DNA from: Mobula hypostoma
Taxonomy: Eukaryota
Assembly (NCBI RefSeq): GCF_963921235.1
Contig: NC_086123.1
Span: 30,194,001-30,258,000 of the forward strand
Length of the DNA stretch: 64,000 nucleotides
Direction: 5' to 3'
Shown here: positions 3,237 through 64,000 of the stretch, piece by piece
Layout: every line of letters starts with the position of its first letter
Position numbering within the stretch: the first letter of the stretch is position 1
Notes under the pieces: generated by a model
Database searches by the model: none
The model's input: only the letters and a program-made list of their open reading frames with translations
Told to the model about the DNA's origin: nothing
Made by a program: the position numbers and the translations under genes

Positions 3237-4573
3237 TGTCATAGCGGGGGCGCTGGGAGGTGGACCCAAATGCAAGGCACAGACACTGAAGTACTAGGAA
3301 CAGGACAGGACTAGAGACTAGAGTTAGGGATGTGACTGGAAGCAGACTAGGAGCTGGGACAAGAACACAGACTTGGGCTAGGACATTGGCTAGGCAAGCG
3401 GGGCCAGGAATAGGAACTGGGAACTGGGAGCCTGGGCTTGGACTCCGAGACAGAGACTGGACAAGGACCCAGAACCTGGGTCTTGACTCGGGCTCGGATC
3501 CCAGAACTAGGTGAGGACATGACGTGGCTACAAGACTGGATATAGCTTGGGTTCCTCAAGGCTTGGGTTCTTCGTGGCTTGGGTTCCTTGAGGCGAGGAC
3601 ATGACGTGGTCTTGGGAGACAGGACTAGGCAAGGCTACAGGACAGAACGACAGACTCCTGCGCAGGACGAGGGAACTCCAGCGCAGGACGAGAACACGAA
3701 GCCTTGACTTGGTACTCAGGAACAGACGAGCCTTGGACTTGGAACAACTGGAACCTCGGAACTTTGGACTTGGGACGACAGGAACGCAGAACACAGAGCA
3801 TTGGTCTTGGGGAGGACAGGAACACAGAGCCTTGGTCTAGAGCACGGGAACACAGAGCCTTGGACTTGAGACAGGAACACAGAGCCGGGACCCCTCCTTG
3901 GGAACAGGACTTAGGGCTGGGACTCATACATGGAGAACAGAGCCAGGACCCCTCCTTGGGAGCAGGGCTTGGGGACAGAGCTCTACACAGAATGCTGAAC
4001 ACAACAAGATGGTTCCCAACATTAGGTAACAGCAAATGGCCAGACCTACCTAGCGAAGGCATGGAAACAGAGAGAGTTCCAAATACTAGGTAGTGGCAAA
4101 CGGCCAGACCTACCTAGCGAAGGCGTGGACACAGAGACAGTTCCAACTCAATGATAGACAGTTCCTTATCTTGACACAGCAAGACTCTGGTTTTGCTCCG
4201 GTGGTTGAACTTGACAAGGTTGCAGGCAAGGCTTCAGAAGGAAGGGGAAGGGAAGGGAACGGTCCAGCCTCAGGGTAACAGCAAAGATGGCCTGGCTTAC
4301 CCAACAGAGGCAAGGACAGGAAGGGACAGATCCAACCGTAGGGTAACGGCAAAGCCGGCCTGACTTACCCCATGGAGGCGAGGACGGGATACTGATAAGA
4401 CAAACCAGCAACCACACTCGAACCTAGGGCCACATATGCCCAGCCCCAAGACGAGCATCAGGTGCCTATAATTAAGCCCAACTGAAACGAAGGATAGCCG
4501 GAAGACCCGGAGTACGGAGTCCACAGACCGGACCATGAACCGGAACGCGGACTTCACGGACCAGACCATGACA
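3237..4573 (-). mobile_element. Solo LTR (Gypsy-like), 1337 bp, with internal short tandem repeats
   Basis: TGTCAT...ATGACA inverted termini, near-perfect 5-bp TSD (gcaat/gcatt), and it interrupts a LINE fragment ('ctaactggctgca|ttactgtctggtat'). Confidence 0.75.
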
Positions 4574-5454: not shown

Positions 5455-5810
5455 AGCAACACACACAAAATGCTGGAGGAATTCAGCTGGTCAGGCAGCA
5501 TCTATCAAAATGAATTAACAGTCGACCCTTCTTCAGGACTGGAAAGGAAGGGGAAAGACGCCAGAATAAAAGGGTGAGGGCATGAGGAAGGAGGACGAGC
5601 TAGTAGGTAAAGCCAAGTGGGTGAGAAATGTAAAGGACTGGAGAGGAAAGAATCCGATAGGAGAGTGGACCATAGGAGAAAAGGAAGGTGGAGAGTACCC
5701 GGGGGGAGGTGATAAGCAGGTGAGAAGAGGCAAGAGGCCAGAATGGGGAATAGAAGAAGAGGGGAGGAGGAGGGAAGGTTTTTTTAAAAACCGGAAGGAG
5801 AAATCGGTCT
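5455..5810 (-). mobile_element. Penelope-like element 3' end / pseudo-LTR, family B (other copies about 15190-15500, 25430-25835, 35805-35985, 36257-36450, 42675-42925, 43370-43580, 48975-49220, 50040-50260, 56990-57200)
   Basis: Copies at 25770-25830 and 49141-49215 encode, on the minus strand, (EEQ)HLIFHLGxLxPDxMNI, typical of the C-terminus of Penelope GIY-YIG ORFs. This is followed by a pyrimidine-rich tract and a decayed hammerhead motif. Confidence 0.75.
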
Positions 5811-5817
5811 AATTAAT

Positions 5818-6085
5818 TAATTAATTGAGATACAATGTGGAATAGGCCCTTCTGGCCCTTTGAGCCATACAGCAACCCACCAATTTAACACTCACCAAAT
5901 CACGGGACGATTCCCAATGACTAACCAATCTACCAACCAGTACGTCTTTGGACAGTGGAAGGAAACTGGAGCACCCGGAGGAAACCCATGTGGGGAGAAC
6001 ATACAAACCCCTTACAGACAGCGGCGGGAATTGAACCCGGGTTGTCTGTACTGTAAAGTGCTGTGCTAACCACTACGCTACTGTA
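5818..6085 (-). mobile_element. tRNA-derived V-SINE (HE1/HER1-like); other copies about 14215-14500(-), 16135-16420(-), 24930-25160(-), 34800-35035(-), 37215-37465(+), 44830-45065(+), 59755-60040(+)
   Basis: A/B-box-like head 'gtagcgtagtggttagcac...ggttcaattccc', V-domain 'gggtttcctccgggtgctccggtttcctcccac', tail 'ctgtatctcaataaataaa'. Confidence 0.8.
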
Positions 6086-6625
6086 CTGGCCTCATTCTGC
6101 ATATTTGGCAAAGGGTCTGTTATACCCTCCACTTTGTTTTGTTTGACATAAGCATCTTTCTTGCCTGAATTTATTCCCATTTTAAAACATCTCACATCAG
6201 CAGTGAGCAAAAAAGTCCCCCCTCCAACAAATCCACCAGCAAGTCCCCTACGACTAATGGCCTCTGTGAAATCATACAACTGAGGAAGCTTTAGGGATTT
6301 TACAGTCTTGCAGGTGCTTTCTCATAGTATTATGTGCAGATACAGTAACTGCACCCACTTGTCTCCTAATTTGCTACTCTGTTTTCTGAATGTCTCTGTA
6401 ATATCCAAAATTACATGTGCCACCCGTCCCTGGTTACAGATGCCCAAATTACAGACATCCGTATGTATGAACAAGCTCCTAGAATATTAGTAAACTCAAA
6501 GGTCCAATATGCATACATATGTTCATCCCTACGAACATCAAAACTGGTTTCCTCTCTCTCATTCTCTGCTACTGGTAATCGTTCTACCTTTTCAACCTCA
6601 CGTGTATTGGATCTCATTCATTATA

Positions 6626-7180: not shown

Positions 7181-10100
7181 AAGACCATAAGATATAGGAG
7201 CAGAATTAGACTATTTGGCCCATCGAGTCTGCTCCGCCATTTCATCATGGCTGATCCATTTTTCCAGCTGCCGGTGGCAACGAGTTCCACAGATTCACCA
7301 CTCTCTGGCTAAAGAAATTCCCCCTCATCTCCATTCTAAAAGGACACCCCTCCATTTTGAGGCTGTGTCCTCTGGGCTTAGACTCCCACCATAGAAAACA
7401 TCTTCTCCACATCCACTGTATCAAGGCCTTCCACCATTCGATAGTTTTCAATTAGGTCACCCCTCATTCTTCTAAATTCCAGTGAATAAAGGCCCAGAAT
7501 CAAACACTCTTCATATGACAAGCCGTTTAGTCCCAGAATTATTTTAGTGAACCTTCTTTGAACCCTCTCCAGTTTCAGCATGTCCTTTATAAGATAAGGG
7601 GACCAAAACTGCTCACAACACTCCAAGAGAGGCATCAACAGTGTTTTAGAAAGTCTCAACATTACTTCCTTGCTTTCATATTCTAGTCCTCTTGAAATGA
7701 ATGCTAATATCACATTTGCCTTCCTCAGCACAGACTCAACCTGCAAATTAACATTTAGAGCATCCCGCACAAGGGCTCCCAAACACTTTGCTCCATAGAC
7801 TTTTTGTATTTTCTCTCCATTTAGAAAATAGTCAACCCTTTCATTTATTCTACTGAAGTGCATGACCATATACTTCCCAACACTGTATTTCATCTGCCAC
7901 TTCTTTGACTATTCTCCTAATCTGTCTCAGTCCTACTGCAGCCTCTCTACTTCCTCAAAACTACCTGCCCCTCCACCTATCTTCGTATCATCTGCAAGCT
8001 TTGCAACAAAGCCATCAATTCCATCATCCAAATCATTGACATATAACATAAAAAGAAAAAGAATTGGTCCCAACACAGACCCCTGTGGAACACCACTAGT
8101 CACTGGCAGCCAACCAGAAAAGGCTCCCTTTATTCCCACTCTTTGCCTCCTGCCAATCAGCCACTGCTTTATCCATGCTAGAATCTTTCCTGTAATACCA
8201 TGGGCTCGTAGCTTGTTAAGCAGCCTCATATTTTGCACCTTGTCAAAGGCCTTCTGAAAATCCAAGTACACAACATCAACTGATTCTCCTTTGTCTATCC
8301 TGCTTGTTATTTCTTCTAACAATTCGAACAGATCTGTCAGGCAAGATTTTCTCTTGAGGAATCCATGCTAAGGTCTATATTATCACGTCCCTCCAAGTAC
8401 CCGAAAATCACATCCTTAACAACCATCTCCAACATCTTCCCAACCACTGAGGTCAGACTAACTCTCCTATAGTTTCCTTTCTCCCGTCTCTCGCCCATCT
8501 TGAAGAGTGCAGTGACAATTGCAATTTTCCAGTCTTCTGGAACCGCTCAAGAATATAATGAATCTTGAAAGATCATTACCAATTCCTCCACAATCTCTTC
8601 AGCCACCTCTGGGGTGTACACCATCCGGTCTAGGTGACTTATCTACCTTCAGACTTTTCAGTTTCCTAAGAACCTTCTCTCTAGTCATGGTAACTTCACA
8701 CTCTTCATGTCCCATGACACCTGGAACTTCCACCATACTGCTTGTCTCTTCCACAGTGAAGAACTGATACAAAGTACTTATTCAGTTTGTCTTCCATTTC
8801 CTTGAACCCCATTATTATCTCTCCAGCTTCATTTTCCAGCAGTCCGATACCCACTCTCTCCTCTCTTTTACACTTAATATATCCGAAGAAACTTTTGGTA
8901 TCCTCTATAATATTATTGACTAGCTTATTTTCATATTCCATTTGTACCTTCTTAATGACTTTTTAGTTGCTTTCTGTTGGTTTTTAAAAGCTTCCCCAAC
9001 CTATTATATGCCCTCTCCTTGGCTTTTATGTTGGCTTTGATTTCCCTTGTTAGCCATGGTTATGTCATCTTGTCTTTAGAATACTTCTTCCTCTTTGGGA
9101 TGTATATATCCTGTGCCTTCCAAATTGCTTCCAGAAATTCCAGCCTTTGCTGCTCTGCCGTCATCCCTGCTAGTGTTCTTTTCCAATTAGTCGGGCTAAC
9201 TTCTCTCTCATGCCTCTGTAATTCCCTTTACTCTGCTGTAATATTGATTTTCCCAATCTACCTGCAAATTTTAATCTCCCATGACTATTGTAACATTGCC
9301 CTTTCGGCGTGCATTTTCTATCTCCCATTGTAACTTGTAGACCACATCCTTACTACTGTTTGGGAGTCTGTGTACAACTCCCATCAGGGTCTTTTTACTC
9401 TTGCAGTTCCTTAGATCTATCCACTATGACTCAACACCTTCCGACCCTATATCACATCTTCCTAATGATTTAATTTTATTTTTTACCGACAGAGTCACAC
9501 AACCCCCTCTGCCTTCCTGCCTATCCTTTCAAAACAATGTGTATCCTTGGAGGAGAAACTTGTGTGGCCCTGTGATCCCGAGAGCGATGCCGTCTGAAGC
9601 TATGCTCCTGGTAGGGTCACTCATGGCGGTAAGATCGAGGGTGAGGTCCCTGACAAAGAACAATCCAACCAAGACCTCAACGGTGGAACAGGCAGACGAA
9701 GTAACTTCGAACTCAACAGCTGTGAAGGTGGATGAAGGCTGCAACAAATCCATCAGCTCAATCGTCATGGTTTCCATGCCATTGGAATCAGTTGGTTGAT
9801 TTGTGAAGTAACGTGTGCTTCTTGGAGTGCAACATCGAGTACACGTTAAACAAATACACACACAGGCGTCTTCGCTCTGTGGGCCACTTCTTCAGAATGA
9901 AGACCATCATCCTCGACGTCAAGGGATAGCCACGACAATGACGATCCTTGGACATTAAGCTCCTAGCACTAATCCTGCTTCAGCCATGATTCAGTGATGC
10001 CTGCAACATCATACTTGCTCATGTGTAACTGTGCTACAAGTTCATGGACCTTATTCCGTATACTGCACACATTCAAATATAACACCTTTAGTCCTGTATT

Positions 10101-10489: not shown

Positions 10490-10700
10490 NNNNNNNNNNN
10501 NNNNNNNNNNNNNNNNNNNNNNNNNNNNNNNNNNNNNNNNNNNNNNNNNNNNNNNNNNNNNNNNNNNNNNNNNNNNNNNNNNNNNNNNNNNNNNNNNNNN
10601 NNNNNNNNNNNNNNNNNNNNNNNNNNNNNNNNNNNNNNNNNNNNNNNNNNNNNNNNNNNNNNNNNNNNNNNNNNNNNNNNNNNNNNNNNNNNNNNNNNNN
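10490..10700. other. Assembly gap (211 N)
   Basis: Run of n. Confidence 1.
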
Positions 10701-12825: not shown

Positions 12826-13702
12826 TTACAATTACACCATCACATTACAATTGACGGGATTGGCAAAAGGCCCTCCCTACTAAAAAAAACAGAACAAGTT
12901 CACACAAGTGAAACAATCAACTCAACCTCTTCCTGTTAGTCACACCAGCTTACCCTCTCCAAAGATGGCCTGATACATCTGTGATGGCATCAGCTAAAGA
13001 CCAGGTAATTTTCACAGCAAGGATCAAAAACACCATGTTCCTCAAATCATAAAGCAGTAGATCCTTCATCAAAATTCTGAATTAAGAAGGTTCAATTTGT
13101 AAATCCACAAGTTGGTATTTTTACTCTATTAATTTCCCATTTCGCCTTCAATACGTGCACATTTAACAGTGAACTAAGCACAACTATAAATTTGTAATTA
13201 AACGCAAAGCTGCTTGACACACACTGAAGAACTTTTAGAGACACCTTTTGGCATTGACAATATTCTAAATATTGTACCTTGACAATATTCTAAGCAAAGA
13301 CACTTTCCCCTCAATTCTTCATACTACTCATACTAACAGAATGTGCAGGGAAATATTACAAGTTGAAGATAAATCTTCTGAATCAACAAGTGGTCATTTT
13401 AAGTGGTGCTTAAGCCTCTTGAGATGTACCTGGATATACAATTCCTTTCATCAGGAATTCTGAAGCAGAAGACTGGCATTGGCCTAATGAATTTGTGAGA
13501 AGTATTGGCATGCGAAGAGTTAAGTAGATCATAATTATTTAAAAGGAAAGAACTCTCCTCCTCACACACTTAGCAGCAAGATAACATCCTGGGACTGACT
13601 AAAAAGTTCCCCGACAAGCACTATTATCTGCTGGCTGTTGACTGAAGCAACACTTGGAATGCTGACAGTACACAGAAATTCGGACTGCTACAACTCACTT
13701 AC

Positions 13703-13753
13703 CCAGAAATACTGAAAACTCCTGCGCAGCCATGGGCAATAATAGTAATCCAT
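13703..13753 (-). CDS. KIAA1671: Candidate alternative first coding exon of a short KIAA1671 isoform (MDYYYCPWLRRSFQYFW)
   Basis: Strong Kozak context gaggagATGG, 17 codons, canonical donor TGG|gtaagt in phase 0 (same phase as the giant exon donor), in a repeat-free island. It resembles an MDYYYCP- start I recall from short vertebrate KIAA1671 isoforms; not verified here. Confidence 0.7.
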
Positions 13754-14110
13754 CTCCTCTGATGAGAATATTTCTGTGTGTTTAAAAAAAATACAGTTCA
13801 AATAAGCTCACGAGGCCATGCTATCTGCCTGTTGATTTCCGAGTTAAAGTGAGCCCTGGGGCAGGTCGAGCTAAATTTCCCTGATGTCACTAACTAAACC
13901 TAGCAGCGTGTGCACACACACACTCACACTCTCAAAGTGGCTGCTGATCTGCAGTCTCGCCCCAGACTTAGCACTGTCAGAGTATCTGCCAGCTGACGGG
14001 GAGAGAGAGAGAGACACACACAGACAGATCAGTCACGTGACACACCAGCCAGGAAATAACTGCTGCCGTAATTGCTGCCTGGCTGTGCTTTCCAAACGAA
14101 GCGTCTTTTT
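13754..14110 (-). promoter_or_regulatory. Putative internal promoter / 5' UTR with palindromic E-box GTCACGTGAC (14032-14041)
   Basis: Transposon-free stretch directly upstream of the candidate ATG, with a perfect USF/MiT-TFE type site, a CAGGAA ETS-like site and CA/GA simple repeats. Confidence 0.5.
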
Positions 14111-16705
14111 TTTAAACTAGTCTTACTTTCAGCAGTCAATTGATGATCTACGACATCAAAGGAACAGAAGAAATATACAGTGGTCAATTGATGAGGTGAT
14201 CTACGACATCAATTTATCTATTTATTTACGGAGATTCAGCACAGAACAGGCCATTCCAGCCCTTTGGGCTGTGCTGCCCAGCAACCCCTGATTTCACCCT
14301 AGCCTAAACACAGGACAATTTACAACGACCAATTAACCTACCAACCGGTACGTCTTTGGACTGTGGGAGGAAACCGGGACACCCAGAGGAAACCCACGCG
14401 GTCACGGGGAGAAGGTTACAAATTCCTTACAGGCAGCGGTGGGAATTGAACCCGGGTTGCCTGGACAGTAAATCGCTGTGCTAACCACTACGCCACCGTG
14501 CTGTTAAGAAACATAAGAAATATGTAATGGTATATACAGTGGTCAATTGATGAGGGGTTCTACAACAGCACACAAACAAAAATTCTTCTCCTCAGTGTAT
14601 AGTAGGAGAACAGTGGAACAGATAAAGTCTCTGTGCCCCATGCCCCCCTCCCGCCTCAGCCACAAGGAGCTGTTTACCATATATGGTATTTTGACATAAA
14701 TTGGCAACAGCGCAAGAGAATGATACTTAATCACTCTTTTCCCCACGGTCCTGATACTGATTAGGACCAGGACATTTTTACAGCTAATGTACGAACTGTA
14801 TTTAAGACTTGTTTACGCTATTTATGTCATCTGTTGGGGTGAGAGGAAAGATAACTTAAATGTGGCTCCAGTTGTGACTTACTCTGATAATACGGTTCAA
14901 CCAAATTCTGGATGAAAACTCCGTTTCAATATATAGGGGGTGGCTGCCTAGAGGAGGTTAAAAGATTAATTAAGTCAGGATTCAGCCTGGGAACAATCAA
15001 CCTAGGTGCAAGGAACTGTTTAAAAAAAAATCAACATGCAACCAAAATGGTCGTATTGACAGGTGAAAGCATTGCATATAGAACCACCCAGTTCAGCCCT
15101 GACAATTGTCATCTCTCCATCTTCAAAAGGTTAACAGGCTTGTGTCTACCTTGCATGTTAAATAGCCTCTGCAGGGAAAATTCCCTCGCCCTCTCCTCTT
15201 ACCTCTTCTCCACTTGCCTATCACTTCCCCTGGGATCCCCTCCTCTTTCCCTTTCTCCTGTGGTCCACTTCCTCTCCTACCAGATTCCTTTCTCTCCAGC
15301 CTTTTACCTTTCCTACTCACCTGGCGTCAACTGCCAGCTATCCTCCTTCCGCTCCCCCTCACCTTTTATTTTGGCGTCTTCCCCCTTCCTTTGCAGGCCT
15401 GACTGTTTATTCATTTCCACAGATGCTGCCTGACCCGCTGAGTTCCTCCAGCATTTTGTGTCTGTTACTTTGGATTTCTAGCCTCTGCAGATTCTCTCGT
15501 GTTCATTATTTTCTGGAAATGAAGTTACTTTCAGGCCAAATATGCACTTCTTGAAACGTATTGACTGTTGTAATCAGGAATACTCCAGCCAAGTTGCATA
15601 CAAAAAGGCATCATTAACGTTATGACAAGAACATAATCTCTTTCAGTGATGTGGATTCAGGGATAAGTATTGCTCAGGATGTCAGATTCGTCATAGCTGT
15701 CACAAGATACCTCTGACCTGAAAAATGGAATCTCTTGCCGTGCAAAATTAGACTTCAGCCAAAGTGTCATCCTTTACTTTGTGCTGAAGTCCCCAATATA
15801 GGACTGGATGCTCAGCACGGGAAACCAGCAGGATGGATGTGTGCGGAGATTCCTGCTGCTGTGGGGCTGCAGGCTTCTTCTGCTGGGTAGGAATGGGGCA
15901 TTTCCATCTTCCTTCACTTCACTGGGAGCGCTGAGCAGTCTCACGGAGACAGCGAGTGCCACCGGCAGCTGCTCTTCCTGCGTCTGCTAACTATCCCATC
16001 ACAGTCGTTGCCCCACACTGTTTCTGCTCATTTCTGCCGCACGAACAGTTTGAGTTCAGAATCAGAATCAGGTTCATTATTACTAATACATATCATGAAG
16101 TGAGTTGTTTTGTGGCAGCAGTTCAATGCAATTCTATTTATTTATTGAGATACAGTGTGCAAAGGCCCTTTCACCCCTTCGAGGCACACCACCCAGCAAT
16201 CCACCAATTTAACCCTAGCCCAATCACGGTGCAATTTACAATGACCAATCAACCTACCAATCATACACCTCTGGACTGTGGGAGGAAACCGGAGCACCCG
16301 GAGGAAACCCATGGGGAGAACATACAAACTCCTTACAGGCAGTGGCAGGAATTGAACCCCGGTCCTGGTCGCCTGTACTGTAAAGCGTTGTGCTAACCAC
16401 TACGCTACCGTGCCGCCCCATTACAAACCAGAATAAATAAAAAGTACAATAGTGAAGGAACAGCGTTCATGAATTCATGGAGGGTTCAGAAATGTGATGG
16501 CGGTTGGCAAGCTGCTCCTAAAACATTGAGTGTGCTTCTTCAGGCTCCTGTACCTCCTCCCTGTTGGTACTAATGAGAAGTAGGTTTATCCCAGAGGGTG
16601 AGGGTCCTTAATAATGCATACCAACCGTCTTGAGGCTCTCCCTTTTGAAGATGTCCTCAATGTTACAATGGCTTGTTCCCATGATGGAGCTGGCTGAGTC
16701 TACAG

Positions 16706-18477: not shown

Positions 18478-20840
18478 GAGGGGATGCAGTATTGGATCTC
18501 GTATTAGGAAACGAGTTAGGACAAGTGACGGAAGTGTGTGTAGGGGAGCACTTTGGTTCTAGTGATCATAACACCATTAGTTTCAACTTGATCATGGATA
18601 AAGATAGATCTGGTCCTCGAGTTGAGGTTCTAAACTGGAAGAAGGCCAAATCTGAAGAAATGAGAAAGGATCTAAAAAGCGTGAATTGGGACAGGTTGTT
18701 CTCTGGCAAGGATGTGATCGGTAAGTGGGAAACCTTCAAAGGAGAAATTTTGAGAGTGCAGAGCTTGTATGTTCCTGTCAGGATTAAAGGCAAAGTGAAT
18801 AGGAATAAGGAACATTGGTTCTCAAGGGATATTGCAACTCTGATAAAGAAGAATAGAGAGTTGTATGACATGTATAGGAAACAGGGAGTAAATAAGGTGC
18901 TTGAGGAGTATAAAAAGTGCAAGAAAATACTTAAGAAGGAAATCAGGAGGGCAAAAAGAAGACATGAGGTTGCCTTGGCAGTCAAAGTGAAGGATAATCC
19001 AAAGAGTTTTTACAGGTATATTAAGAGTAAAAGGATTGTAAGGGATAAAATTGGTCCTCTTGAAGATCAGAGTGGTCAGCTATGTGCGGAACCAAAAGAA
19101 ATGGGGGAGATCTTAAATGGGTTTTTTGCGTCTGTATTTGCTAAGGAAACTGGCATGAAGTCTATGGAATTAAGGGAAACAAGTAGTGAGATCATGGAAA
19201 CTGTACAGATTGAAAAGGAGGAGGTGCTTGCTACCTTGAGGCAAATTAAAGTGGATAAATCCCCAGGACCTGACAGGGTATTCCCTCGGACCTTGAAGGA
19301 CACTAGTATTGAAATTGCAGGGGCCCTGGCAGATGTATTTAAAATGTCGGTGTCTATGGGTGAGGTGCCGGAAGATTGGAGAATGGCTCATGTTGTTCCG
19401 TTGTTTGAAAAAGGATCGAAAGTAATCCGGGAAATTATAGGCCGGTAAATTTAACATCGGTAGTGGGTAAGCTGTTGGAAGGAGTACTGAGAGACAGAAT
19501 CTACAAGCATTTGGATAGACAGGGACTTATTAGGGAGAGTCAACATGGCTTTGTGCGTGGTAGGTCATGTTTGACCAATCTATTGGAGTTTTTCGAGGAG
19601 GTTACCAGGAAAGTGGATGAAGGGAAGGCAGTGGATGTTGTCTACATGGACTTCAGTAAGGCCTTTGACAAGGTCCCGCATGGGAGGTTAGTTAGGAAAA
19701 TTCAGTCGCTAGGTATACATGGAGAGGTGGTAAATTGGATTAGACATTGGCTCAATGGAAGAAGCCAAAGAGTGGTAGTAGAGGATTGCTTCTCAGAATG
19801 GAGGCCTGTGACTAGTGGTGTGCCACAGAGATCAGTGCTGGGTCCATTGTTATTTGTCATCTATATCAATGATCTAGATGATAATGTGGTAAATTGGATC
19901 AGCAAATTTGCTGATGATACAAAGACTGGAGGTGTAGTGGACAGTGAGGAAGGTTTTCAAAGCTTGCAGAGGGATTTGGACCAGCTGGAAAAATGGACTG
20001 AAAAATGGCAGATGGAGTTTAATACAGACAAGTGTGAGGTATTGCACTTTGCAAGGACAAACCAAGGTAGAACACACAAGGTAAATGGTAAGGCACTGAG
20101 GAGTGCAATAGAATAGAGGGATCTGGGAATACAGATACAAAATTCCCTAAAAGTAGCGTCACAGGTAGATAGGGTCATAAAGAGAGCTTTTGGTACATTG
20201 GCCTTTATTAATCAAAGTATTGAGTATAAGAGCTGGAATGTTATGATGAGGTTGTATAAGGCATTGCTGAGGCCGAATCTGGAGTATTGTGTTCAGTTTT
20301 GGTCACCAAATTACAGGAAGGATATTAATAAGGTTGAAAGAGTGCAGAGAAGGTTTTCAAGGATGTTGCCGGGACTTGAAAAACTCAGTTACAGAGAAAG
20401 GTTGAATAGGTTAGGACTTTATTCCCTGGAGCGTAGAAGAATGAGGGGAGATTTGATAGAGGTATATAAAATTATGATGGGTATAGATAGAGTGAATGCA
20501 AGCAGGCTTTTTCCACTGAGGCAAGGGGAGAAAAAAAACCAGAGGACATGGGTTAAGGGTGAAGGGGGAAAAGTTTAAAGGGAACATTGCGGGGGGGGGG
20601 CTTCTTCACACAGAGAGTGGTGGGAGTATGGAATGAGCTGCCAGATGAGGTGGTAAATGCGGGTTCTTTTTTAACATTTGAGAATAAATTGGACAGATAA
20701 TGGATGGGAGGTGTATGGAGGGATATGGTCCGTGTGCAGGTCAGTGGGACTAGGCATACATGCAGAAAATGGTTCGGCACAGCCAAGAAGGGCCAAAAGG
20801 CCTGTTTCTGTGCTGTAGTTTTTCTATGGTTTCTATGTTT
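18478..20840 (+). mobile_element. Relatively young 5'-truncated CR1 LINE (ORF2 RT domain, disrupted)
   Basis: ORFs 18492-19448, 19463-20116 and 20198-20578 with KSPGPD, QHGF, YMDFSKAFD, FADDTK and QFWSP; tail tttctatggtttctatgtttc. Confidence 0.95.
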
Positions 20841-24095: not shown

Positions 24096-27000
24096 TGCTG
24101 GGATTGTGATGGGCAAAGCACAGATTCATCAGCTTGCTCCAGTTTTTAGCAATATCAAATCAGTTGCAATGACTTGCAGTGCTTCCTGTTGACAGGTTAC
24201 AGTGGTTCATTTGAAGGTCATTTAAGAGAAGAATTTATAATAAGAAAAAATCTGCCAGAACAGGTACACAGAAACTCTTTCTTCTTCTAAGGAAATCCAA
24301 AACAATAGGGTGTAATTGTAGACATGAAATTTCCATTGCGGAAGTAAAATTTTCTTTGTTTTGGAACTCTGTACAGTCCATGGACGTGGCTTCAATAGTA
24401 ACGGGTTTAACCAAATGACAAAGACCATATTGTGATTCTCCATCCATGGGAAGCTGCCTACAAGCACAAACTAATCCCTTAACCACGTACTAAATACCAG
24501 GGATTCAAAAACATCATTAACCAATCAACTGAAAGTGAAATCTATTGACTAAATTTAGGTGCAAATTTTTGCTTAAAGTGGACATCTGTTCTACGATTTA
24601 CACTTGAGAAGCATCCACACAAAATAGCCCGTTTTTTTCTGAAAATGGGTCGCTTACTTACAAAATGTGGACAGCACATTTTATAGAATCAGCTTTATAA
24701 AGATTGGTTGGAAGATATTCAGGCTATTTGGGATATGCTAGCTGCAAACATTTATCCAATTAGTCCCACTCTCCCGCTCCTTTCCCATATCCCTACAAAT
24801 CACATATTTACCCAATTTCCCAAGGAGAGCAGAACATGCACTCATATCCATTTTAGGCACACCAGTATAACTCAGTACTTGTTGCTTCTTTCCCTTTCTC
24901 ATCTATTGCTCTCTTCCCAAAACCTTTGATTGATTGATTGATTGAGATACAGACAAGAGTAGGCTTTCTTGGCCCCTCGAGCCATACTGCCCACTAACCC
25001 CAGATTTAACCCTACTCTAATCACAGGACAATTTACAATGACCAATTAACTTAATAACCGGTACATCTTTGGACTGTGGGAGGAAACCAGAGCACCCGGA
25101 GGAAACCCCACAAAGAGTCATGGGGAGAATGTACAAACTCCTTACAGACAGCAGTGGGAACTTGCATACTCTAGTCACCAAAATCCCAATGACTAAAGCG
25201 GTTTCGACTTGTTTACCAGGAGAGAGGCAGCAAATGAGTGAAGTTAAAAGGGATAGCAATGTATTCTCATATATGAACCACAAGGATTTAACAGGAAGGT
25301 CCAACAGGTAGTTAAAGTATCAAACTGCATGGTGGTTTTTAATGGGAAAGAGTCAGAGTTTAAGAAGAGGGGAAGTTTTGTAACAGTTGTGCAGGGTGTT
25401 GTTGAGGCTACACTGCGAACACTGAGCATACACACAAAATGCTAGAGGAACTCAGGAGATCAGGCAGCATTTAGGCAAATGAGTAAACAATCGACATTTC
25501 GGGCCGAGACCCTTCTTCAGCCCCAGAAAGGAAGGGGAAGCTGGCGGAGTAACAAGGGGAGGGAAGGAAGACTGGCTGGAAGGTGATGGGTGAAGCCAGG
25601 TGGGGGGGAAAGGTAAAGGGCTGGAGAGGAAGGAATCAGGTAAGGGAGGAGAGTGGACCAGAGGAGTAGACCCAGGAGGACATGATGGGCAGGTAAGAAG
25701 AGGTGAAAGACCAGAGTGGGGAATAGAAGAAAAGGGGAGGGAGAAGGAATTTTTTCTTTTTAACCAGGACAAATTGATATTCATGCCATCAGGTTGGAGG
25801 TTACCCAGATGGAATATAAGGTGGTGGCCTCATCTGGGCACAAGAGTAGGTCATGGACCAACATGTCAGAGTTTTGAATTCTTTATCAATGAAGAAAGTA
25901 CATAGCGGTATTGGAGGACAGTCCAAAGGAATCTAAATCCGAATCTAAAAGGAGATTCAGCAGGTTAATTCCTGATATGAGAGGATTGTCTTATCGAGAA
26001 AGGCTGATAATTTGAGTATAAAAGAAAGAAGCGAAACCTCATACCAGCATATATGATCCTACTGTGTTTTGACAGGATAGATGTCAGGATATTTCAATAG
26101 TAGCAGAGTCGACCTGGGGGACGGAGCAACATAATTAAAAATGAAGTGCATGGACATTTCTTCTCTCAGAGGTGAGTGATGCTTTGGAATTCACTGCCCT
26201 TGAAGGTGGAGGCGCGATCATTAAACTTGTTTGAGATTGCTAGATATATCGTTAGATGTATTTGAAGTGGAAGTTATGGGTTGAACTCAACATCAGAAAG
26301 ACCAAGGAATTGGTTGTGGACTTCAGGAAAAGCAAATTGAAAAAACACATAGCAGTTCTTGTCCAGGGGGTCAGCAGTGGAAAGGGTGAGCAATTTCAAG
26401 TTCCTGGGTGTCAAGCAGCTTCAGTTCCTGGGTGCCAACATCTCTGAGGACCTATCCTAAGTCCAACACGTTGATGCAATTACAAAGGAAGCATTCTAGC
26501 AGATATATTTCATTCGGTGTTTTGAGGAGGTTTGATGGGTCACCAACGACTCTAGCAAGTTTTCACAGACGTACCACGGAGAGTGTCCTGACGGGTTTGT
26601 CTAATATGGAAGCGCCAGTGCACAGTCAGAAAAGGCTACAGAGGCTGTAAATTCAGCCAGCTCCATCAAGGGCACCAGCCTCTCCACCATCGAGGACATC
26701 ATCAAAAGGCGATGTTTCAGGAAGGCGGCATCTGTCATGCATGACCATCACCGTCTAAGACGTGCCTTTTTCTCATTACTACCATCAATGAGGAGGTACA
26801 GAAGCCTGAAGATACACACTCAACATTTTAGGAACAGCTTCTTCCCCTTTGCCATCAGATCTCTGAACGATCCATGAACTCATGAATTTGCTCTCTTTTT
26901 GCACTATTTTTGCTACATATTCTTATTGTAATTTATGTACTGCTGCCACTCAACAACAAATTTCATAACATATGCCAATGATAATAAACCTGATTCTGAT

Positions 27001-48530: not shown

Positions 48531-51140
48531 GATCGCCTGTCCACAGTGACACCCACTACCTGTCTGCCTGATCCTCAGCAGCACCCACACAACAACCCAC
48601 TTCCATCACGCAGACACCAGTATCACACTTCATTGTGAAAGCTAGCTCTTACTGCTTTGTGGACTGGACATTTGCCCCACTGTAGTTCGCGTCCAGAGTG
48701 GGTCTTCTCTTCATTTTGTTTCTTGCCCTTTACAGCCAGGTGAAGCATATCCCCAATTGACCGCCTCGTGGTCTTTCGGAAATCCACACTTGGTTCCTTT
48801 TGTACAGGCTGGGAATCCTATCGCACACAAAGCCAGGTAAGTGGTATCAGAAAATGACATTTAAACTCTGTGTTAACAGTACGCACATCGCATATTGTTC
48901 AATGCAAATAGTTAAGAGAAATGCAGGTGCCACTAATGCAACATTACTTTCGTTCTCAGTAATTACTCCTCCCCAGCAACACACACAAAATGCTGGAGGA
49001 ACTCAGCAGGTCAGGCAGCATCTATAGAAAAGAGTAGATAGCTGATGGTTCAGGCCAAGACTGGAATAGAAGGATCAGACTGGAATAGAAGTGGGGTAAA
49101 AGCCAGAATAAAAAGGTGGGGGGGGAGGGGAAGGAGGATATTCATGCTATCAGGATGGAGGCTACCCAGATGGAATATAAGGTGTTGCTCCTCCACCTTG
49201 AGGGTGGCCTCATCTTGGCAGAAGACTTGTCCCCATTTACGAAGTTAAACCCAGGGGCGTGGGACATAGTGTATGGACATAACAAAGAACTTCATTTCCC
49301 AGTGGGCAATACGGGTGGTTCACCCAGAACTAGAAGAGAAGTTGGTAAGCTGGTTGCACACACTTGTGTCGAGCTGCAAGCCACTAACAGTGAAAAACTG
49401 TTTTACCACGCTGTTTGTACCTATTAAGAACAAACATAACAAACTCTCCGGCAATGCAGTGATATTCAAAACTGAGCAATTGTAGTGATTAAACAAATTA
49501 GTCCATCCAAATCTTTGTCGCTGGGAAGACACAGAATTCAAGATAGACTGCTATGTATGAATAAAAGATATCCCTCTAGCCTCTGGCAATGCAGGAGATG
49601 ACAGTGGCCGAAGATGGTCTGACCTGGGGTTGGAGAATGACGTACGTGCATTTGAGAGGAACGGGGACTTCTTTTGCTGTTGTTGCTTGTTGTGTTCTGC
49701 AGAGCAGGTTGGGCACGCTATCTAGGTTCCAGACCATGAGGCGACAATTGCAGGCCGCCCTCATCACATCACTGGGTTATTAATGTTTGTTATTAATGCG
49801 AACGACGCGTTTCACTGTACGTTTCAACGCACATGTGCTAAATAAATGGATCTTAACCTGAATCTGAATTTGGTTGTAAGCAAACCAACCCTCTTAATCG
49901 GGCACCAGCAGACACACTTGTATGTCTACAATGCATTCACAGAAACACCCAAATGGACTTCATTACAACTCTGTGGCAAACAGATTTCTGAATGACTTGG
50001 CAATGATGCATGTTATTTCCACCCTCCCCCCCACCATCTGTTCCCCATTCCGGCCTCTTACCTCTTCTTACCTGCCTATCACCTCCCCCACATCCCCTCC
50101 TCCTTCCCATTCTCCTCTCCTATCAGATTCCCTCCTCCCCAACCCTTGACCTTTCCCACCCACATGGCTATCACCTTCCAGTTATCCTCCGCCCCACGGT
50201 TTTATTCTGGCATCTTCCCGCTTTCTCCTCAGTCCTGAAGAAGGGTCTTGGCTGAAACCAGCATGGAGATCTCACAAAATCAGAGCAAAACCGTAATTGA
50301 ACCAACTTGGTAGATAGTGATGAGAAAGGAAAATTAAAGAGAGTTACTTTGCAATGCGATAGGAAGCTACACTTCGAGTGCTATGTATAGGTTTGGTCAC
50401 CCTGCTACAGGAAAGATGTTATTAAATTAGAAAGGGTGCAGAGACGATTTACCCAGAAGTTGTTTGGATTTGGGATCCTGACCTACAAGGAGAGGTTGCA
50501 TGGACTAAGATTTTGTTCCTTGGAACGTAGCAGATTGAGGGGTGACCCGAGAGAAGTATAAAATACCGTGAGGTCCACAGGTAGGTGAAGGTCATTATCA
50601 TCATTATGTGCCGTGTTGTATGACGTGGGTGATCACGGTCTCATGATCATGATTGTTCTTGGCAAAATTTTCTACAGAAGTAGTTTGTCATTGTCTTCTT
50701 CTGGGCAGTGTCTTTACAAGACGAATGACCCCAGCCATGATCAATACTCTTCAGAGATTGTCTGCCTGACGTCAGTGGTCACATAACCAGGACTTGTGAT
50801 GTGCACCAGTTGCTCACACGATCATCCACCACCTCCTCCCATGGCTTCATGTGACCCTGATCGGGGGGTCTAAGCAGCAGCTACACCTTGCCCAGGAGTG
50901 ACCTGCAGGCTAGCGGAGGGAAGGAGAACCTTACATCTCCTTTGGTAGAGACCTATCTCCACCCCCACCCAAGAGGAAGGTACATAGTCTTCCCAGAGAT
51001 GGCTTAAGATCATAGGTAAGAGATTTGAAAGGGACATCAGGGGTGGCTTCTTAATGCAATCTATGGAGTTTTTTAGTAATGCACTGCCAGAGCTACTGAT
51101 TGAGACAGGCACATTAGCAACAGTTAAAAATGATCTTGAT

Positions 51141-52345: not shown

Positions 52346-55183
52346 CATCTTATCCTCCACCGTTGACGGCAATCTGTGCTTTGAAATCTCTGTGCCACGG
52401 TGTTGAACTCTGTCAGATGAGTTGCTCCTTCTTCCTTCATAATGCTTATCGTCTGCTGATGTACCTTGCTGGTTTATTATAAGCCCATCGAACGCTTTTT
52501 GTGTCTCCTTGTGAACTTCTATAGGTCTTGACTTTTTAACCTCCGAAACAGAATGATGCGGCTCTTTAGGATGGACTCTTGATATTCGAGGAGAATTCTG
52601 GCCAGAGTGTTCTCCACGGTGTTTTGTCCTGCTTTCCACTTTCACGTGCTGCTCGCTGTCTACTGACATCTCAATGTACTTTTCTTTCTCCGATACATGT
52701 GAAGAACCATAAATAGGCCTCCTTGAGCTGTCCAAGTCATCCAAGAAGCTGGTTTTACTACTCAGGTAATGACCTTCCAGCGTTTGGTTTGAACTGTCCA
52801 TCGCTGCCCAAGTTACGAAACTTGCCTCATCACTCCAGTCCTTTTTGCGGCTTGGCACCGGTTCCCACTGATCATCCTTTCTAAATTTCACTTTGTCCCT
52901 GCCAGCATCAGTCATTTGCCCACCTCCAAGCAGATCAGACTGTTGCAAGTCACTGTACCCTGGAGAGGCTGGAGATGGTTGGCTTTTCCTTTTCTCATGT
53001 TTGTGCCGTCTAATTATATTGGCTATTGTGCTGGTGACACCATCCATTTCTTCGCTTCCTTCACACTCTGACTTCTGGCGAGTTGAAGAAACATTCTTCC
53101 CCACCTCTTCATATTCACAGTAAGCTGAGTAAGGTCTGCTTTTCTTCTTTTCTGTGAGACTTTTTTTCAAGTCAGTGTATGTGTCATCATAAACATCCCT
53201 TTTAAATTCGGCATCATGATGTTTCTTGTTTTGATCATTTCGCCTAGAAGTCTTCACTCCTTCTGAAAGAGGTGATAAGGTATTTTCAGTTTTTGTTCTC
53301 GTAGACCTGCCACTGGTTGGTTTTGAACCAGACATCTTTTGGAGAGAATCCATTGGCCTTGATGTTTCTTTTGAATAATCAGCCATCAGAGCATCTAGGT
53401 CAAGGATGTTATGATGCAAAGCCTTTTTATTATGCTTATCAGAAGTAACTTTTCTTCTGCCTGAAGGGGAAGATGTTCCAAGGTCTTGATCAGCAAATTT
53501 TGTCAACTTTGGTGTTCTGTGTTCTTCATAACCTTCTTGAAGAGTTTTGGAATGATGGCTATCCTTTTTATCATGGTAATGGAAACTTTTTGACTCTTCA
53601 TCAATTTTTCTTTCTGAATTTTCTTTTCTGTATTCCAACATCAAAACATCAAGATCCAATACACTATGGCTTTTGCGTGGCAAACTGCTCCTTGTCTTTT
53701 TTGATTTCTCAATATCTGCTGTTTTCGACCTTCTCACAGGCGATGTTACATGGGCTTCCTCTGACACATTATCCATTCCACTTGTCAGTGGACTGGAAAG
53801 AAACTCTTCAGACAACAAAGTTGATTTCTGCTTTTCTGGAGTGGAAATCTTTGGATAACCTTTGGAGTACTCCTCAAAGAAGCTCTCTGACTTCCTATTG
53901 GCTGAAACTTGTTTTTGGTAGGTAGCCTCCGTTGAAAAATCAGTCACTTGATCAGCTGCAGAGTTGGCTCCTGTCGAAAACTTATTGCTTTTCTCATTCC
54001 TTCTTGCTCTTGGAATGGCCTTCCGATAGATTTCCAAAGTTGTGTCATCTTGAAACCAACGTTTAGTTTCTTTCCCCGCCTCAGTATCATCCCTGCCGTC
54101 TGGAAGCTTTAATCCAGTAGAGGGCAGCATTTCCTGAGTGGTTGAGTCAATGTATGTTTTCTCAAGATACCTCGAGCTACTTTTTGAAGTAGCTGTGTCT
54201 GGGTTACTGAACGAGCTATGCCGTGTTACTCTCAGCAGCTTCTTTCCAACTACACCCGTTTCCAGCATTGCCGAGTTTGGCATCTTTTCATGAGATTGCC
54301 GAATCTGAACAGCATTAGGCACCTCAGCTCCTTTGACTTCAGAATTTGGTGCAGATGAGGGCGACTGTGATAAACGGCTGGCGTCAGTGGGATGTGGCCG
54401 ATACCAGCGCCTCCTGAAACTGCTGTCCTTTCCTTCAGGTTTTGTTTGGTCAGTCACAATGTACGACTTCCTCACCTTCTGTGCCTCAGCCTTGTCTTCA
54501 GATGTTGCAGGGAGAGAGGACCGAACTACTTTTTCACTTACTTTTTGCACGGTATCAATTTTATCATTGCTTGCAGACGACAGAAAACTGGAAACATTTA
54601 GTTCAGTAACCTTTGAGGAGGAACACCCGGGATCAGATTGTTTCTCTTTTTCAAAGCACGTTTTTTCTTTCCCCTCCAAAGAGTTAGCTTCGAGCTGCAG
54701 TGATTTTGTTTTCTTCACCTCTTGTTCACCATGCACGATGTCGACTGTTGTTTTCATTGCTGTGTAACTCTTTGACCTGGATCTTGAAGCTTGTTCTGGT
54801 CTTCTATCCTTATCAAGGAAGGAATTCAGTGAATGGGAGGAACTATCCGGCGCAACAGACTCTGGTTCCTGAAGGTGTTGCATCTCTCTTTCAATTATAA
54901 ACATTCTTAGAGATTTTGTGTCAGAGTCACTTTTCTTTCCATCTGAACTTTGGGAAGTAGTTTCGCTCATTGAGGAAACACTATCAGCTGCATTGGTTGT
55001 GTTTACTTGGCCCTTTGTCTCCTTCATCCTGACAAAACTGTTTCGTCTGCTGATTTTCTCAGAGCTGGGTTTCTCGTCTGTGATCCCTTTTTCCAAACCT
55101 TTGCTCACTTTCCGCAACGACTTACGCCGGCTCCAAGTGAGTTCGGTGTCAGTCTCCATCAAGTGTGTTTGGTCCTTCTCTGC
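52346..55183 (-). CDS. KIAA1671: KIAA1671-like giant internal coding exon, 2838 nt (946 codons)
   Basis: Covered by the 955-aa ORF. Acceptor tatttcag|GCA at 55183 is in frame; donor ATG|gtaagt after 52346. Contains VLDLDVLMLEY and ILDLDALMADY. Confidence 0.88.
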
Positions 55184-57727: not shown

Positions 57728-57881
57728 CAGGTCTCTTTCAACTTCATTCCTTTTGCTGAGGCTTCCCCTCCCTCTCTGTTCTGGGGTGCTCTGCAAAACT
57801 GAGCGTTCCGGAGATGAAAAGACAGTCACATCCACCTGCTTCTCAAAGCGACCTTCGTCGCCAACTGCTCGCGTCTCAAAC
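57728..57881 (-). CDS. KIAA1671: KIAA1671-like internal coding exon, 154 nt ((L)FETRAVGDEGRFEKQVDVTVFSSPERSVLQSTPEQRGRGSLSKRNEVERDL)
   Basis: Acceptor cctttttccaacag|G at 57881 and donor CTG|gtaatg after 57728. Its length (1+153 nt) joins the phase-2 upstream donor to the phase-0 downstream acceptor with no stop, and it completes the motif ITKL-FE. Confidence 0.85.
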
Positions 57882-62931: not shown

Positions 62932-64000
62932 AGTTTAGTTATATCTGAAGATAGAGGTCTCGGCTGGAACTGTCGCCTTTGGGGACTCGAGATTTGTTCT
63001 TTGTTCTCTGAAGTAAGGCTTTGGATTTGCTGCTTAACACGTATGCTCATCTTTTCCTTCTCGACAGTTGTCTGTGGACTATCTGTCTTTGCTGTGCTGT
63101 TACTGGCGGAGTCCAAGAGAAGGCTAATGCGCCTTCTAATTATCCCACCAGAAACTGGCGTTCTACTTCCTTTACGCTTTCGATCATCGGAATCCAGAAA
63201 GGAATTTTCATCATTTGATGTTGGCTCCGGGTTAGAAGAAATTTTATCCAATTCCCTATTTGTCAAATTTTTATGTTGCTCCTGGTCATCTTCCAATTTT
63301 TCCTTGTTAGTTTTTGATGAGGAGCTGAATGTACTTTCTTCCTTTTCCTCACCTTTGGGTCCTGCATTAGCTTTATCATCACCATAGTCACTTTGCCACA
63401 GTGCCTTGCTTTCCAGTGAAGTGACTGCTTCTTTATTATCGAGCTCAGTCAATGGAAAAGCATTGACATCTTTTTTACTGATATCCATCTTTGGGACGCT
63501 TTTGAACTTTTCTTTAACATGAGAGTAACCCCCTCCCTTGTCCTCATGGTCATCGGGAGAAGCTGGAGACCTGGACTGCTCTCTTTCTGCTGCAGTCTCT
63601 TCAGGTTGACCTGGCGTCTTGTGTTCAGTCCCTGAGAACGAAGCACCAGCTACTTGCATAACTGGGACATTTTCTTTGCTTTCCTCTGGTACACAATTAT
63701 TTCCTTTGTAAAAGGAGGAACGTGCTGGTTCAAATCTGGCTGTTAGGTCCATTGACAAAGGCCTGGGTTTTTTAAGCCAAGGTTTTTCAGGAGGAGAAGT
63801 ACTTTCATCTTGTTTTACAGTGATTTCTGAATTATGGTCATTTGTAGTTCCAGAAAGCCAGGTAGATAATGGTCTAGATTTCCTTACATGGGCCCTGTGT
63901 GAAAGTGGGCTCTCGACAATATCCTTTTCCTGAGCTGTTTTGCCTTTGTCTTCTTCTACAGTCTGGTCCAACTTTCCTAAATGATCCAAAGAAAGCATTG
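62932..64000 (-). CDS. KIAA1671: KIAA1671-like protein, large coding exon (runs off the right edge of the window)
   Basis: Open frame 62916-63998 encodes a low-complexity S/E/K-rich protein with PWLKKPRPLSMDLTARFE and RPLSSDITKL, which I recognise as KIAA1671-type motifs. Donor CT|GTATGT after 62932, phase 2. Confidence 0.85.

What the first reader, a model, noticed from the sequence alone, without database searches (positions are those of the whole stretch)
13703..14110. Hidden internal start: 17-codon first exon plus E-box promoter for a short KIAA1671 isoform
Seen: about 38.6 kb downstream of the giant exon lies a transposon-free island with gaggagATGG, the peptide MDYYYCPWLRRSFQYFW and a perfect phase-0 GTAAGT donor. 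The palindrome GTCACGTGAC is about 280 bp upstream. Established: GTCACGTGAC is the USF / MiT-TFE (CLEAR) consensus. Inference: this gives a short isoform of only the conserved C-terminal region, with an aromatic, Cys-containing, possibly amphipathic N-terminus that might target membranes, and it may be under TFEB/USF control. The ORF track misses it.
Basis: partly seen in the sequence, partly recalled or inferred. Interest (0 to 1): 0.7.

Follow-up and report, generated by a model that had tools for sequence, protein, structure and literature searches.

The report
Conserved short-isoform first exon of KIAA1671
The 17-codon mini-exon is real: it matches the start of a short KIAA1671 protein form already annotated from fish to mammals, here found unannotated in a manta-like ray, while the proposed E-box/TFEB control has no support.

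Summary
Observation confirmed. On the minus strand, ATG 13753 opens 17 codons (MDYYYCPWLRRSFQYFW) that end at a phase-0 GTAAGT donor (13702). GTCACGTGAC lies at 14032-14041.

The motif combination alone is weak evidence: ATG plus 17 or more open codons plus GTAAGT occurs 8 times on this strand. Homology settles it. Dozens of annotated 307-319 aa KIAA1671 isoforms begin MEYYYCPxLLKxLxYLW|DQLKQCF. They come from placentals, marsupials, birds, turtles, geckos, reedfish and arowana.

- Swift and arowana genomic DNA show the same 17 codons plus GTAAGT.
- Bird and bat RNA contigs show this exon spliced to the DQLKQCF exon.
- Nucleotide differences are mostly synonymous.

The host gene is a mobulid-ray KIAA1671 homolog (1993 aa). 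That exon's phase-0 donor keeps the new exon in frame with the next exon, which starts DRVKQCF and lies left of the window. The predicted product is 324 aa and carries the Tankyrase_bdg_C domain. AlphaFold2 and hydrophobic-moment analysis make residues 7-25 an amphipathic helix spanning the exon junction.

The E-box/TFEB promoter claim is unsupported:
- there is no CpG island;
- upstream sequence shows no significant similarity to other lineages;
- CACGTG is absent upstream in swift, a second bird, arowana and bat.

This is a new member of a known kind, of modest interest.

The parts
13703..13753 (-). Coding part of the alternative first exon: 17 codons, MDYYYCPWLRRSFQYFW
   Evidence: It is the best tblastn hit in the whole window for the N-termini of tetrapod short isoforms (P0009, E=3.6e-5). 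It is orthologous to the 17-codon exons in swift (L001:4001-4051) and arowana (L004:535-585).
13697..13702 (-). Phase-0 splice donor GTAAGT
   Evidence: The same GTAAGT follows codon 17 in swift and arowana genomic DNA. Its phase matches the phase-0 donor of the exon at 48653-48817.
13754..13763 (-). Start-codon context atcagaggagATGG (G at -3, G at +4)
   Evidence: all five species have a purine at -3 and G at +4.
13808..13819 (-). 3-codon upstream ORF (ATG GCC TCG TGA). Its TGA is the nearest in-frame stop, 19 codons before the start, so 13753 is the first in-frame ATG.
14032..14041 (.). Palindromic E-box GTCACGTGAC, about 283 nt upstream of the ATG. A candidate site only.
   Evidence: single copy, 0.03 expected. 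Not found upstream in the other lineages. No upstream alignment is significant.
14216..14503 (.). SINE copy bounding the unique upstream region. At least 8 further matches in the window; flanked by 39-nt direct repeats at 14173-14211 and 14532-14570.
48653..48817 (-). 55-codon exon of the long isoform (P0001 aa 1632-1686), with AG acceptor and phase-0 GTAAGA donor.
52346..55183 (-). Giant exon (946 codons, P0001 aa 686-1631), phase 0 at both ends, donor GTAAGT at 52345
57728..57881 (-). 154-nt exon of the long isoform (P0001 aa about 635-685)
62932..63998 (-). Part of a large upstream exon (P0001 aa 279-635). It runs off the right end of the window.

Best explanation
The window carries part of a mobulid ray's KIAA1671 homolog on the minus strand. 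The 51 nt at 13703-13753 are the coding part of an ancient alternative first exon. This exon lies in the intron of more than 48 kb that precedes the exon starting DRVKQCF, which is left of the window.

Inferred from orthologs: transcription from an internal promoter, followed by splicing of the phase-0 donor at 13702 to that exon. This would yield a protein of about 324 aa: 17 isoform-specific residues plus the last 307 residues of the long form. The shared part includes the Tankyrase_bdg_C domain. In the paralog TNKS1BP1, the matching region binds the capping-protein subunit CAPZA2.

The 17 residues supply an invariant Cys6-Pro7 and the first 11 residues of a 19-residue amphipathic helix (residues 7-25). 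The shared exon completes this helix, so the full helix exists only in this isoform.

Shown: the sequence features, the orthology, the coding-type conservation, spliced mRNAs in a bird and a bat, and the helix prediction. Inferred: use of the exon in the ray, the position of its promoter, and what the helix binds.
For: 1. Gene identity. P0001 (1993 aa) matches the window exons at 98-99.7%. Its tail carries PF15327 at E=1e-36.

2. Frame. The giant exon, the exon at 48653-48817 and the candidate all end in phase 0.

3. Peptide conservation. 35 database proteins (19 distinct N-termini) start M-E-Y-[YF]-[YV]-C-P...W and continue DQLKQCF. More came from marsupials, a sloth, a rhinoceros, a monkey, a gecko and a kiwi. 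Reedfish has MDFFYCPRFVKVLQRWW and Denticeps has MAACLCPSCFRPIHLLW. M1, Y3, C6, P7 and W17 are invariant in the 20-sequence comparison and are present in the ray.

4. Genomic structure. Swift and arowana have 17 codons plus GTAAGT. The exon order is class-1 exon, then the MDYLGDK exon, then the DQLKQCF exon.

5. Transcripts. Bird contigs L002 and L003 and bat contig L006 join codon 17 directly to the DQLKQCF exon.

6. Coding signature. Swift against the second bird shows 9 nt differences, all synonymous. Ray against the others shows 9-10 of 16-19 differences at third codon positions.

7. Helix. AlphaFold2 on 25 short isoforms gives a helix at residues 7-25. Its blocks have the highest or near-highest confidence in a mostly disordered model (pLDDT 70, 87 and 66 per 10-residue block). 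The hydrophobic moment is 0.55 in the ray and about 0.6 in the others.
Against:
- No short isoform of any Mobula, and no class-1 isoform of any cartilaginous fish, appeared among the database hits.
- The acceptor exon lies outside the window.
- The ray peptide departs from the consensus at some near-invariant positions: L10R, L13F and L16F.
- The promoter is undefined, and there is no CpG island.
- A pyrimidine tract followed by CAG ends 20 nt before the ATG. The coding segment could therefore be preceded by an upstream non-coding exon rather than being the true first exon.
Confidence: 0.88

Rival explanations
1. The GTCACGTGAC palindrome is a working USF or MiT/TFE (CLEAR-type) element of the internal promoter, putting the short isoform under TFEB/USF control.
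For: - It is a perfect 10-nt palindrome and the only copy in 64 kb, against 0.03 expected.
- It lies 283 nt upstream of the ATG, in unique sequence between a SINE and the exon.
- Two birds share AGTCACATG about 215 nt upstream of their ATG, inside a well-conserved block.
Against: - CACGTG is absent within 1000 nt upstream in swift, 673 nt in the second bird, 534 nt in arowana (which contains a 50-nt gap) and 181 nt in bat.
- Ray upstream DNA has no similarity above shuffled controls to swift, the second bird or bat. With arowana it shares only a (CT)n run.
- In the bird RNA contigs the CACATG motif lies inside the transcribed sequence, about 460 nt from the contig's 5' end.
- There is no CpG island.
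- No paper connects KIAA1671 with TFEB beyond incidental co-mention.
- The motif was picked out after the fact.
Confidence: 0.15
2. The segment is an internal exon in the ray. It would be spliced from an upstream non-coding exon, or from the exon at 48653-48817 as a frame-breaking cassette, through the pyrimidine-tract/CAG acceptor-like site ending at 13774.
For: - One search shows tttttttttaaacacacag immediately before AAATATTC..., 20 nt upstream of the ATG.
- The transcription start site in the ray is unknown.
Against: - Bird transcripts are colinear with the genome for at least 664 nt upstream of the ATG, with no splice.
- Annotated models in many species start translation in this exon.
- Joined to the phase-0 exon at 48653-48817, the resulting 71-nt exon would shift the frame (my reading).
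Confidence: 0.08
3. It is a chance ORF next to a chance donor, or a relic exon no longer used in rays.
For: - ATG plus 17 or more open codons plus GTAAGT is common by chance: 8 cases on this strand.
- No ray or shark class-1 isoform is in the databases searched.
Against: - The ray peptide matches the vertebrate consensus at about 10 of 17 positions, including every invariant one.
- It has the same length, the same phase and the same donor hexamer, and it sits in the orthologous intron on the right strand.
- tblastn gives E=3.6e-5 within the window.
- Established knowledge: unconstrained DNA does not keep such a match across the ray-tetrapod split, which is more than 400 million years old.
Confidence: 0.04

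Closest known systems
Annotated 'MEYYYCP' short isoforms of KIAA1671 homologs. Examples: XP_074177622.1 Rhinolophus sinicus X4, XP_045743394.1 Mirounga angustirostris X6, XP_065549190.1 Lathamus discolor X3, UniRef A0A8C9UZF8 Scleropages formosus.
   Same: - A 17-residue isoform-specific start with M1, Y3, C6, P7 and W17.
- A phase-0 GTAAGT donor (seen in swift and arowana genomic DNA).
- Joined to the D/E-Q/R-L/V-K-Q-C exon.
- A product of about 310-324 aa ending in Tankyrase_bdg_C.
   Different: - The ray version has D2, W8, R10, F13 and F16.
- It is not annotated in this genome or in any cartilaginous fish among the database hits.
- Its transcript has not been observed.
Second class of short KIAA1671 isoforms starting MDYLGDKL... 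(about 345-400 aa). Example: XP_055511874.1 Leucoraja erinacea X2.
   Same: Another internal first exon in the same large intron, joined to the same DQLKQCF-type exon. It is conserved from sharks to mammals.
   Different: - It encodes about 95 unrelated residues.
- It lies downstream of the class-1 exon (14 kb in swift, 5 kb in arowana).
- It is not inside this window.
TNKS1BP1 (TAB182) C-terminal region
   Same: It shares the Tankyrase_bdg_C domain (PF15327). Per PMC10092648, human KIAA1671 aa 1617-1711 resemble the CAPZA2-binding region of TNKS1BP1. The short isoform keeps this part.
   Different: It is a paralog. No MEYYYCP-type start was examined or shown for it here.
CLEAR / E-box (GTCACGTGAC) promoters bound by TFEB, TFE3, MITF or USF
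   Same: The exact 10-nt consensus is present 283 nt upstream of the ATG.
   Different: No conservation, no known start site and no binding data. The resemblance is in the motif only.

Membership tests
KIAA1671 class-1 (MEYYYCP) alternative first exon | 17 codons with the pattern M-[DE]-[YF]-[YF]-[YV]-C-P ... W17 | tested here: met
   the ray has MDYYYCPWLRRSFQYFW, and all invariant positions are kept.
KIAA1671 class-1 (MEYYYCP) alternative first exon | Phase-0 GT donor directly after codon 17, in frame with the DQLKQCF-type exon | tested here: met
   GTAAGT as in swift and arowana. The preceding constitutive exon also ends in phase 0.
KIAA1671 class-1 (MEYYYCP) alternative first exon | Lies on the gene's strand in the intron before the DQLKQCF exon, upstream of the MDYLGDK exon | tested here: inconclusive
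   it is in the intron after the exon at 48653-48817, on the gene's strand, and there is no MDYLGDK exon upstream of it. The MDYLGDK and DRVKQCF exons lie outside the window.
KIAA1671 class-1 (MEYYYCP) alternative first exon | Coding-type (synonymous-biased) divergence | tested here: met
   third-position excess. Swift against the second bird shows 9 of 9 differences synonymous.
KIAA1671 class-1 (MEYYYCP) alternative first exon | A spliced transcript in this species | not testable with these tools
Transcripts were seen only in a bird and a bat.
KIAA1671 / TNKS1BP1 family (host gene) | C-terminal Tankyrase_bdg_C domain (PF15327) | tested here: met
   P0001:1687-1993, E=1.1e-36, covering profile positions 2-167 of 167.
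CLEAR-type (TFEB/TFE3) or USF target promoter | GTCACGTGAC-like E-box present | tested here: met
CLEAR-type (TFEB/TFE3) or USF target promoter | Motif conserved at the orthologous promoter | tested here: not met
   absent in swift, the second bird, arowana and bat upstream sequence. The birds have only CACATG.
CLEAR-type (TFEB/TFE3) or USF target promoter | Motif close to the transcription start, and factor occupancy or response | not testable with these tools
   No transcription start site, ChIP or expression data were available for the ray.
CpG-island promoter | High CpG observed/expected ratio and high G+C over the start region | tested here: not met
   CpG observed/expected is 0.43-0.49 and G+C is 0.46-0.48 at 13601-14200. 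The window median is 0.34 and the top windows reach 0.84-0.90.

The most novel reading that the evidence does not exclude
Since the jawed-vertebrate ancestor, the KIAA1671 locus has encoded a separate protein of about 320 aa from an internal promoter. Its isoform-specific start has an invariant Cys6-Pro7 followed by an amphipathic helix completed by the shared exon. In this reading the start acts as a membrane-anchoring (possibly S-acylated) or partner-binding module. It would send the capping-protein-binding C-terminal domain to a different place than the long actin-associated form. In rays the promoter would be driven through the perfect CLEAR/USF E-box.
Probability: 0.08. Interest if true: 0.55.

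Novelty: new member of a known kind. Interest (0 to 1): 0.3.

Why it matters
- It adds a missing exon and protein isoform to the annotation of a ray genome. It also pushes the origin of the 'MEYYYCP' short form of KIAA1671 back to the common ancestor of cartilaginous and bony vertebrates.
- That depth of conservation says the 17-residue start is under selection. Its invariant Cys-Pro and the helix spanning the junction are notable features. The only functional study found here (PMC10092648) does not mention isoforms.
- It also shows that a 17-codon exon invisible to ORF scans can be recognised from sequence alone, and that the attached promoter story does not hold up.

Tried and rejected
- **Genomic loci for short isoforms.** Turtle P0009 and bat P0016 are not on record. 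Seal L005 covers only the DQLKQCF exon region and has no class-1 exon within 10 kb upstream.
- **Shark comparison.** Chiloscyllium loci L007 and L008 flank the relevant interval but do not include it. Positions 69363-115222 of BEZZ01000210.1 could not be fetched.
- **Upstream conservation.** MAFFT and Smith-Waterman comparisons against dinucleotide shuffles found nothing significant except a (CT)n run.
- **CpG-island promoter.** Rejected.
- **Plus-strand ORF 13884-14120.** No Pfam match.
- **Earlier notes of this scan.** Only an unrelated hammerhead note was returned. The word KIAA1671 appears in no finding.
- **Papers.** No study of the short isoform and no real TFEB link.
- An exact-sequence look-up of the predicted 324-aa ray product was not done, because that sequence has no reference and would have had to be typed.

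Full report
**Observation**

On the minus strand the sequence reads gaggagATGG, with the ATG at 13753. It opens 17 codons, MDYYYCPWLRRSFQYFW, which end at 13703. GTAAGT follows at 13702-13697 in phase 0.

GTCACGTGAC is at 14032-14041. It is the only copy in the window, against 0.03 expected. The plain hexamer CACGTG is not enriched, at 6 against 4.7 expected.

The region 13000-14215 has no other copy within the window. A SINE with many copies starts at 14216.

The motif combination by itself is not remarkable. Of 15 GTAAGT sites on this strand, 8 site/phase combinations are preceded by an ATG-initiated open frame of 17 or more codons.

**Host gene**

An exhaustive HMMER search with the 955-aa ORF of the giant exon returned only two cluster representatives:
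- P0001 is 1993 aa and 99% identical. Its names are masked because it belongs to the window's own genome. It differs at 48 of 1993 residues from a Mobula birostris protein.
- P0002 is a Chiloscyllium protein at 36% identity.

The genome is therefore that of a mobulid ray.

tblastn and inspection of splice sites give these minus-strand exons:

| Window coordinates | P0001 residues |
|---|---|
| 63998-62932 | 279-635 |
| 57881-57728 | about 635-685 |
| 55183-52346 (giant exon) | 686-1631 |
| 48817-48653 | 1632-1686 |

It has an AG acceptor and a phase-0 GTAAGA donor.

The next exon starts DRVKQCFVTPNIKAKDTD at residue 1687. It is not in the window. The candidate therefore sits in an intron of more than 48 kb.

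The tail, residues 1687-1993, carries a full Tankyrase_bdg_C domain (PF15327, E=1e-36). That identifies the gene as a KIAA1671 homolog.

**Decisive evidence: orthology**

Searching the C-terminal 299 residues against proteins of similar length returned many annotated short KIAA1671 isoforms. Their N-termini fall into three classes:
- Class 1 starts MEYYYCPxLLKxLxYLW and continues DQLKQCF. These are 307-319 aa.
- Class 2 starts MDYLGDKLTVAQ... These are about 345-400 aa and include skate and catshark proteins.
- A bird and lizard class starts MTYSLWAALIRRI.

Class 1 is the ortholog of the ray peptide. I found 35 proteins with 19 distinct N-termini. They come from placentals (bats, seals, rodents, a pika, a mole, a shrew, a loris), marsupials, many birds, turtles and the arowana Scleropages (MEYYVCPSCLRPLQQLW).

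A second search added:
- a monkey, a sloth, a rhinoceros, a gecko, a kiwi and more marsupials;
- the reedfish Erpetoichthys (MDFFYCPRFVKVLQRWW);
- Denticeps (MAACLCPSCFRPIHLLW).

M1, Y3, C6, P7 and W17 are invariant in the 20-sequence comparison, and the ray keeps them all. Within the window, the best tblastn hit for these N-termini is exactly 13703-13759 (turtle P0009, E=3.6e-5).

**Genomic and transcript confirmation in other species**

Swift (L001) has the 17 codons at 4001-4051 followed by gtaagt. Its MDYLGDK exon lies 14 kb downstream and its DQLKQCF exon 28 kb downstream.

Arowana (L004) has the 17 codons at 535-585 followed by gtaagt. Its MDYLGDK exon is at 5571 and its EQLKKCV exon at about 10022.

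That order fits the ray. No MDYLGDK exon is found anywhere in the window, so it should lie further left.

Assembled RNA contigs show the splice directly:
- Two contigs from a bird (L002 and L003, runs SRR31060322 and SRR31060323) join codon 17 to GATCAGCTGAAGCAG and then to the later exons. They skip the MDYLGDK exon.
- A bat contig (L006, run SRR22936815) does the same after a 181-nt 5' UTR.

The 51 nt evolve like coding sequence:
- Swift against the second bird shows 9 differences, all synonymous.
- Swift against bat shows 13 differences and only 2 residue changes.
- Ray against the others shows 9-10 of 16-19 differences at third codon positions.
- All five starts have a purine at -3 and G at +4.

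In the ray an in-frame TGA lies 19 codons upstream, so 13753 is the first in-frame ATG.

**Mechanism**

All the relevant donors are phase 0, so the candidate donor is in frame with the DRVKQCF exon. The predicted product is 17 + 307 = 324 aa.

AlphaFold2 on an alignment of 25 class-1 isoforms gives a largely disordered protein. A helix at residues 7-25 is among its few confident elements, with pLDDT of 70, 87 and 66 for the first three 10-residue blocks. Only a C-terminal helix (residues 295-312, block value 81) is comparable.

The helix crosses the exon junction, so it is complete only in this isoform. Its hydrophobic moment is about 0.55 in the ray and about 0.6 in seal, owl and arowana, with near-zero mean hydrophobicity. 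The hydrophobic seam is kept in the ray at L9, F13, F16, V20 and F24.

Per PMC10092648, the long protein is a disordered, actin-associated factor at sites of microvillus growth. Its C-terminal region resembles the CAPZA2-binding region of TNKS1BP1. The short form would keep that region.

Whether the Cys-Pro plus helix start targets membranes, is acylated, or binds a partner is inference. It was not tested here.

**The promoter claim**

Nothing else supports a role here:
- CpG observed/expected over 13601-14200 is 0.43-0.49. That is modestly above the window median of 0.34 and far from the top windows.
- Ray upstream DNA aligns with swift, the second bird and bat no better than shuffled sequence does. 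With arowana it shares only a (CT)n run.
- CACGTG is absent within 1000 nt upstream of the ATG in swift, 673 nt in the second bird, 534 nt in arowana (with a 50-nt gap) and 181 nt in bat.
- Both birds carry AGTCACATG about 215 nt upstream, in a well-conserved block. In the bird RNA contigs this lies within transcribed sequence, which extends at least 664 nt upstream colinear with the genome.
- No paper links KIAA1671 and TFEB beyond incidental co-mention.

I rate a functional E-box at about 15%.

**Limits**

- No class-1 isoform of any cartilaginous fish, and no short isoform of Mobula, appeared in the searches.
- The shark interval that should hold the orthologous exon could not be fetched.
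- A pyrimidine tract plus CAG ends 20 nt before the ATG. This leaves open an upstream non-coding exon in the ray. That would not change the protein.

**Verdict**

The exon and short-isoform reading is strongly supported by deep conservation. The E-box/TFEB reading is unsupported.

The isoform is already present in gene models of many vertebrates. The ray exon is therefore an unannotated new member of a known kind. It is of modest interest, mainly for annotation and for flagging an unstudied, very old isoform-specific N-terminal helix.

Noticed in passing
window 48653-48817 (-): A 55-codon constitutive exon of the long isoform (DSQPVQKEPSVDF...CPVHKA) lies between the giant exon and the candidate.
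   Followed up: yes
window 14216-14503, with further matches near 5840-6088, 16133-16413, 24987-25160, 37216-37443, 59759-60039 and elsewhere: A SINE family of about 280 nt has at least 9 copies or fragments in the window (73-87% identity). The copy next to the finding is flanked by 39-nt direct repeats at 14173-14211 and 14532-14570 (90% identical), which is unusually long for a target-site duplication.
   Followed up: partly
window 19463-20116 (+) and 7933-8322 (-): Both ORFs match reverse transcriptase (RVT_1, E=5e-27 and 3e-13). They are LINE fragments inside the big intron.
   Followed up: partly
window 10490-10700: A run of 211 N (assembly gap or masked stretch). Left untouched.
   Followed up: no
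proteins P0152, P0154 and P0157 (Chiloscyllium punctatum, 1732-1738 aa) against P0002 (2039 aa): Sharks have annotated N-terminal-only isoforms about 300 residues shorter than the full form, as well as C-terminal-only forms. The locus may behave as two overlapping transcription units. Their C-termini were not inspected.
   Followed up: no
proteins P0023, P0024, P0056, P0098, P0137 (birds) and P0083, P0099 (lizards): A third, 13-residue alternative start (MTYSLWAALIRRI in birds, MLRAWYAKLLYPI-like in lizards) is joined to the same DQLKQCF exon. No counterpart was looked for in the ray.
   Followed up: no
L001:3760-3850 and L002:430-520: A block of about 80 nt, 130-215 nt upstream of the bird start codon, looked better conserved by eye between swift and a second bird than the 73% overall upstream identity. 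It contains AGTCACATG. In swift a TGACGTGG lies just downstream of it.
   Followed up: partly
protein P0216 (RNA-assembly protein, 266 aa): It is a diverged fish relative starting ...MCLSYLRLLW|EQLKCCV. This suggests a class-1-like start also exists in a paralogous copy.
   Followed up: no
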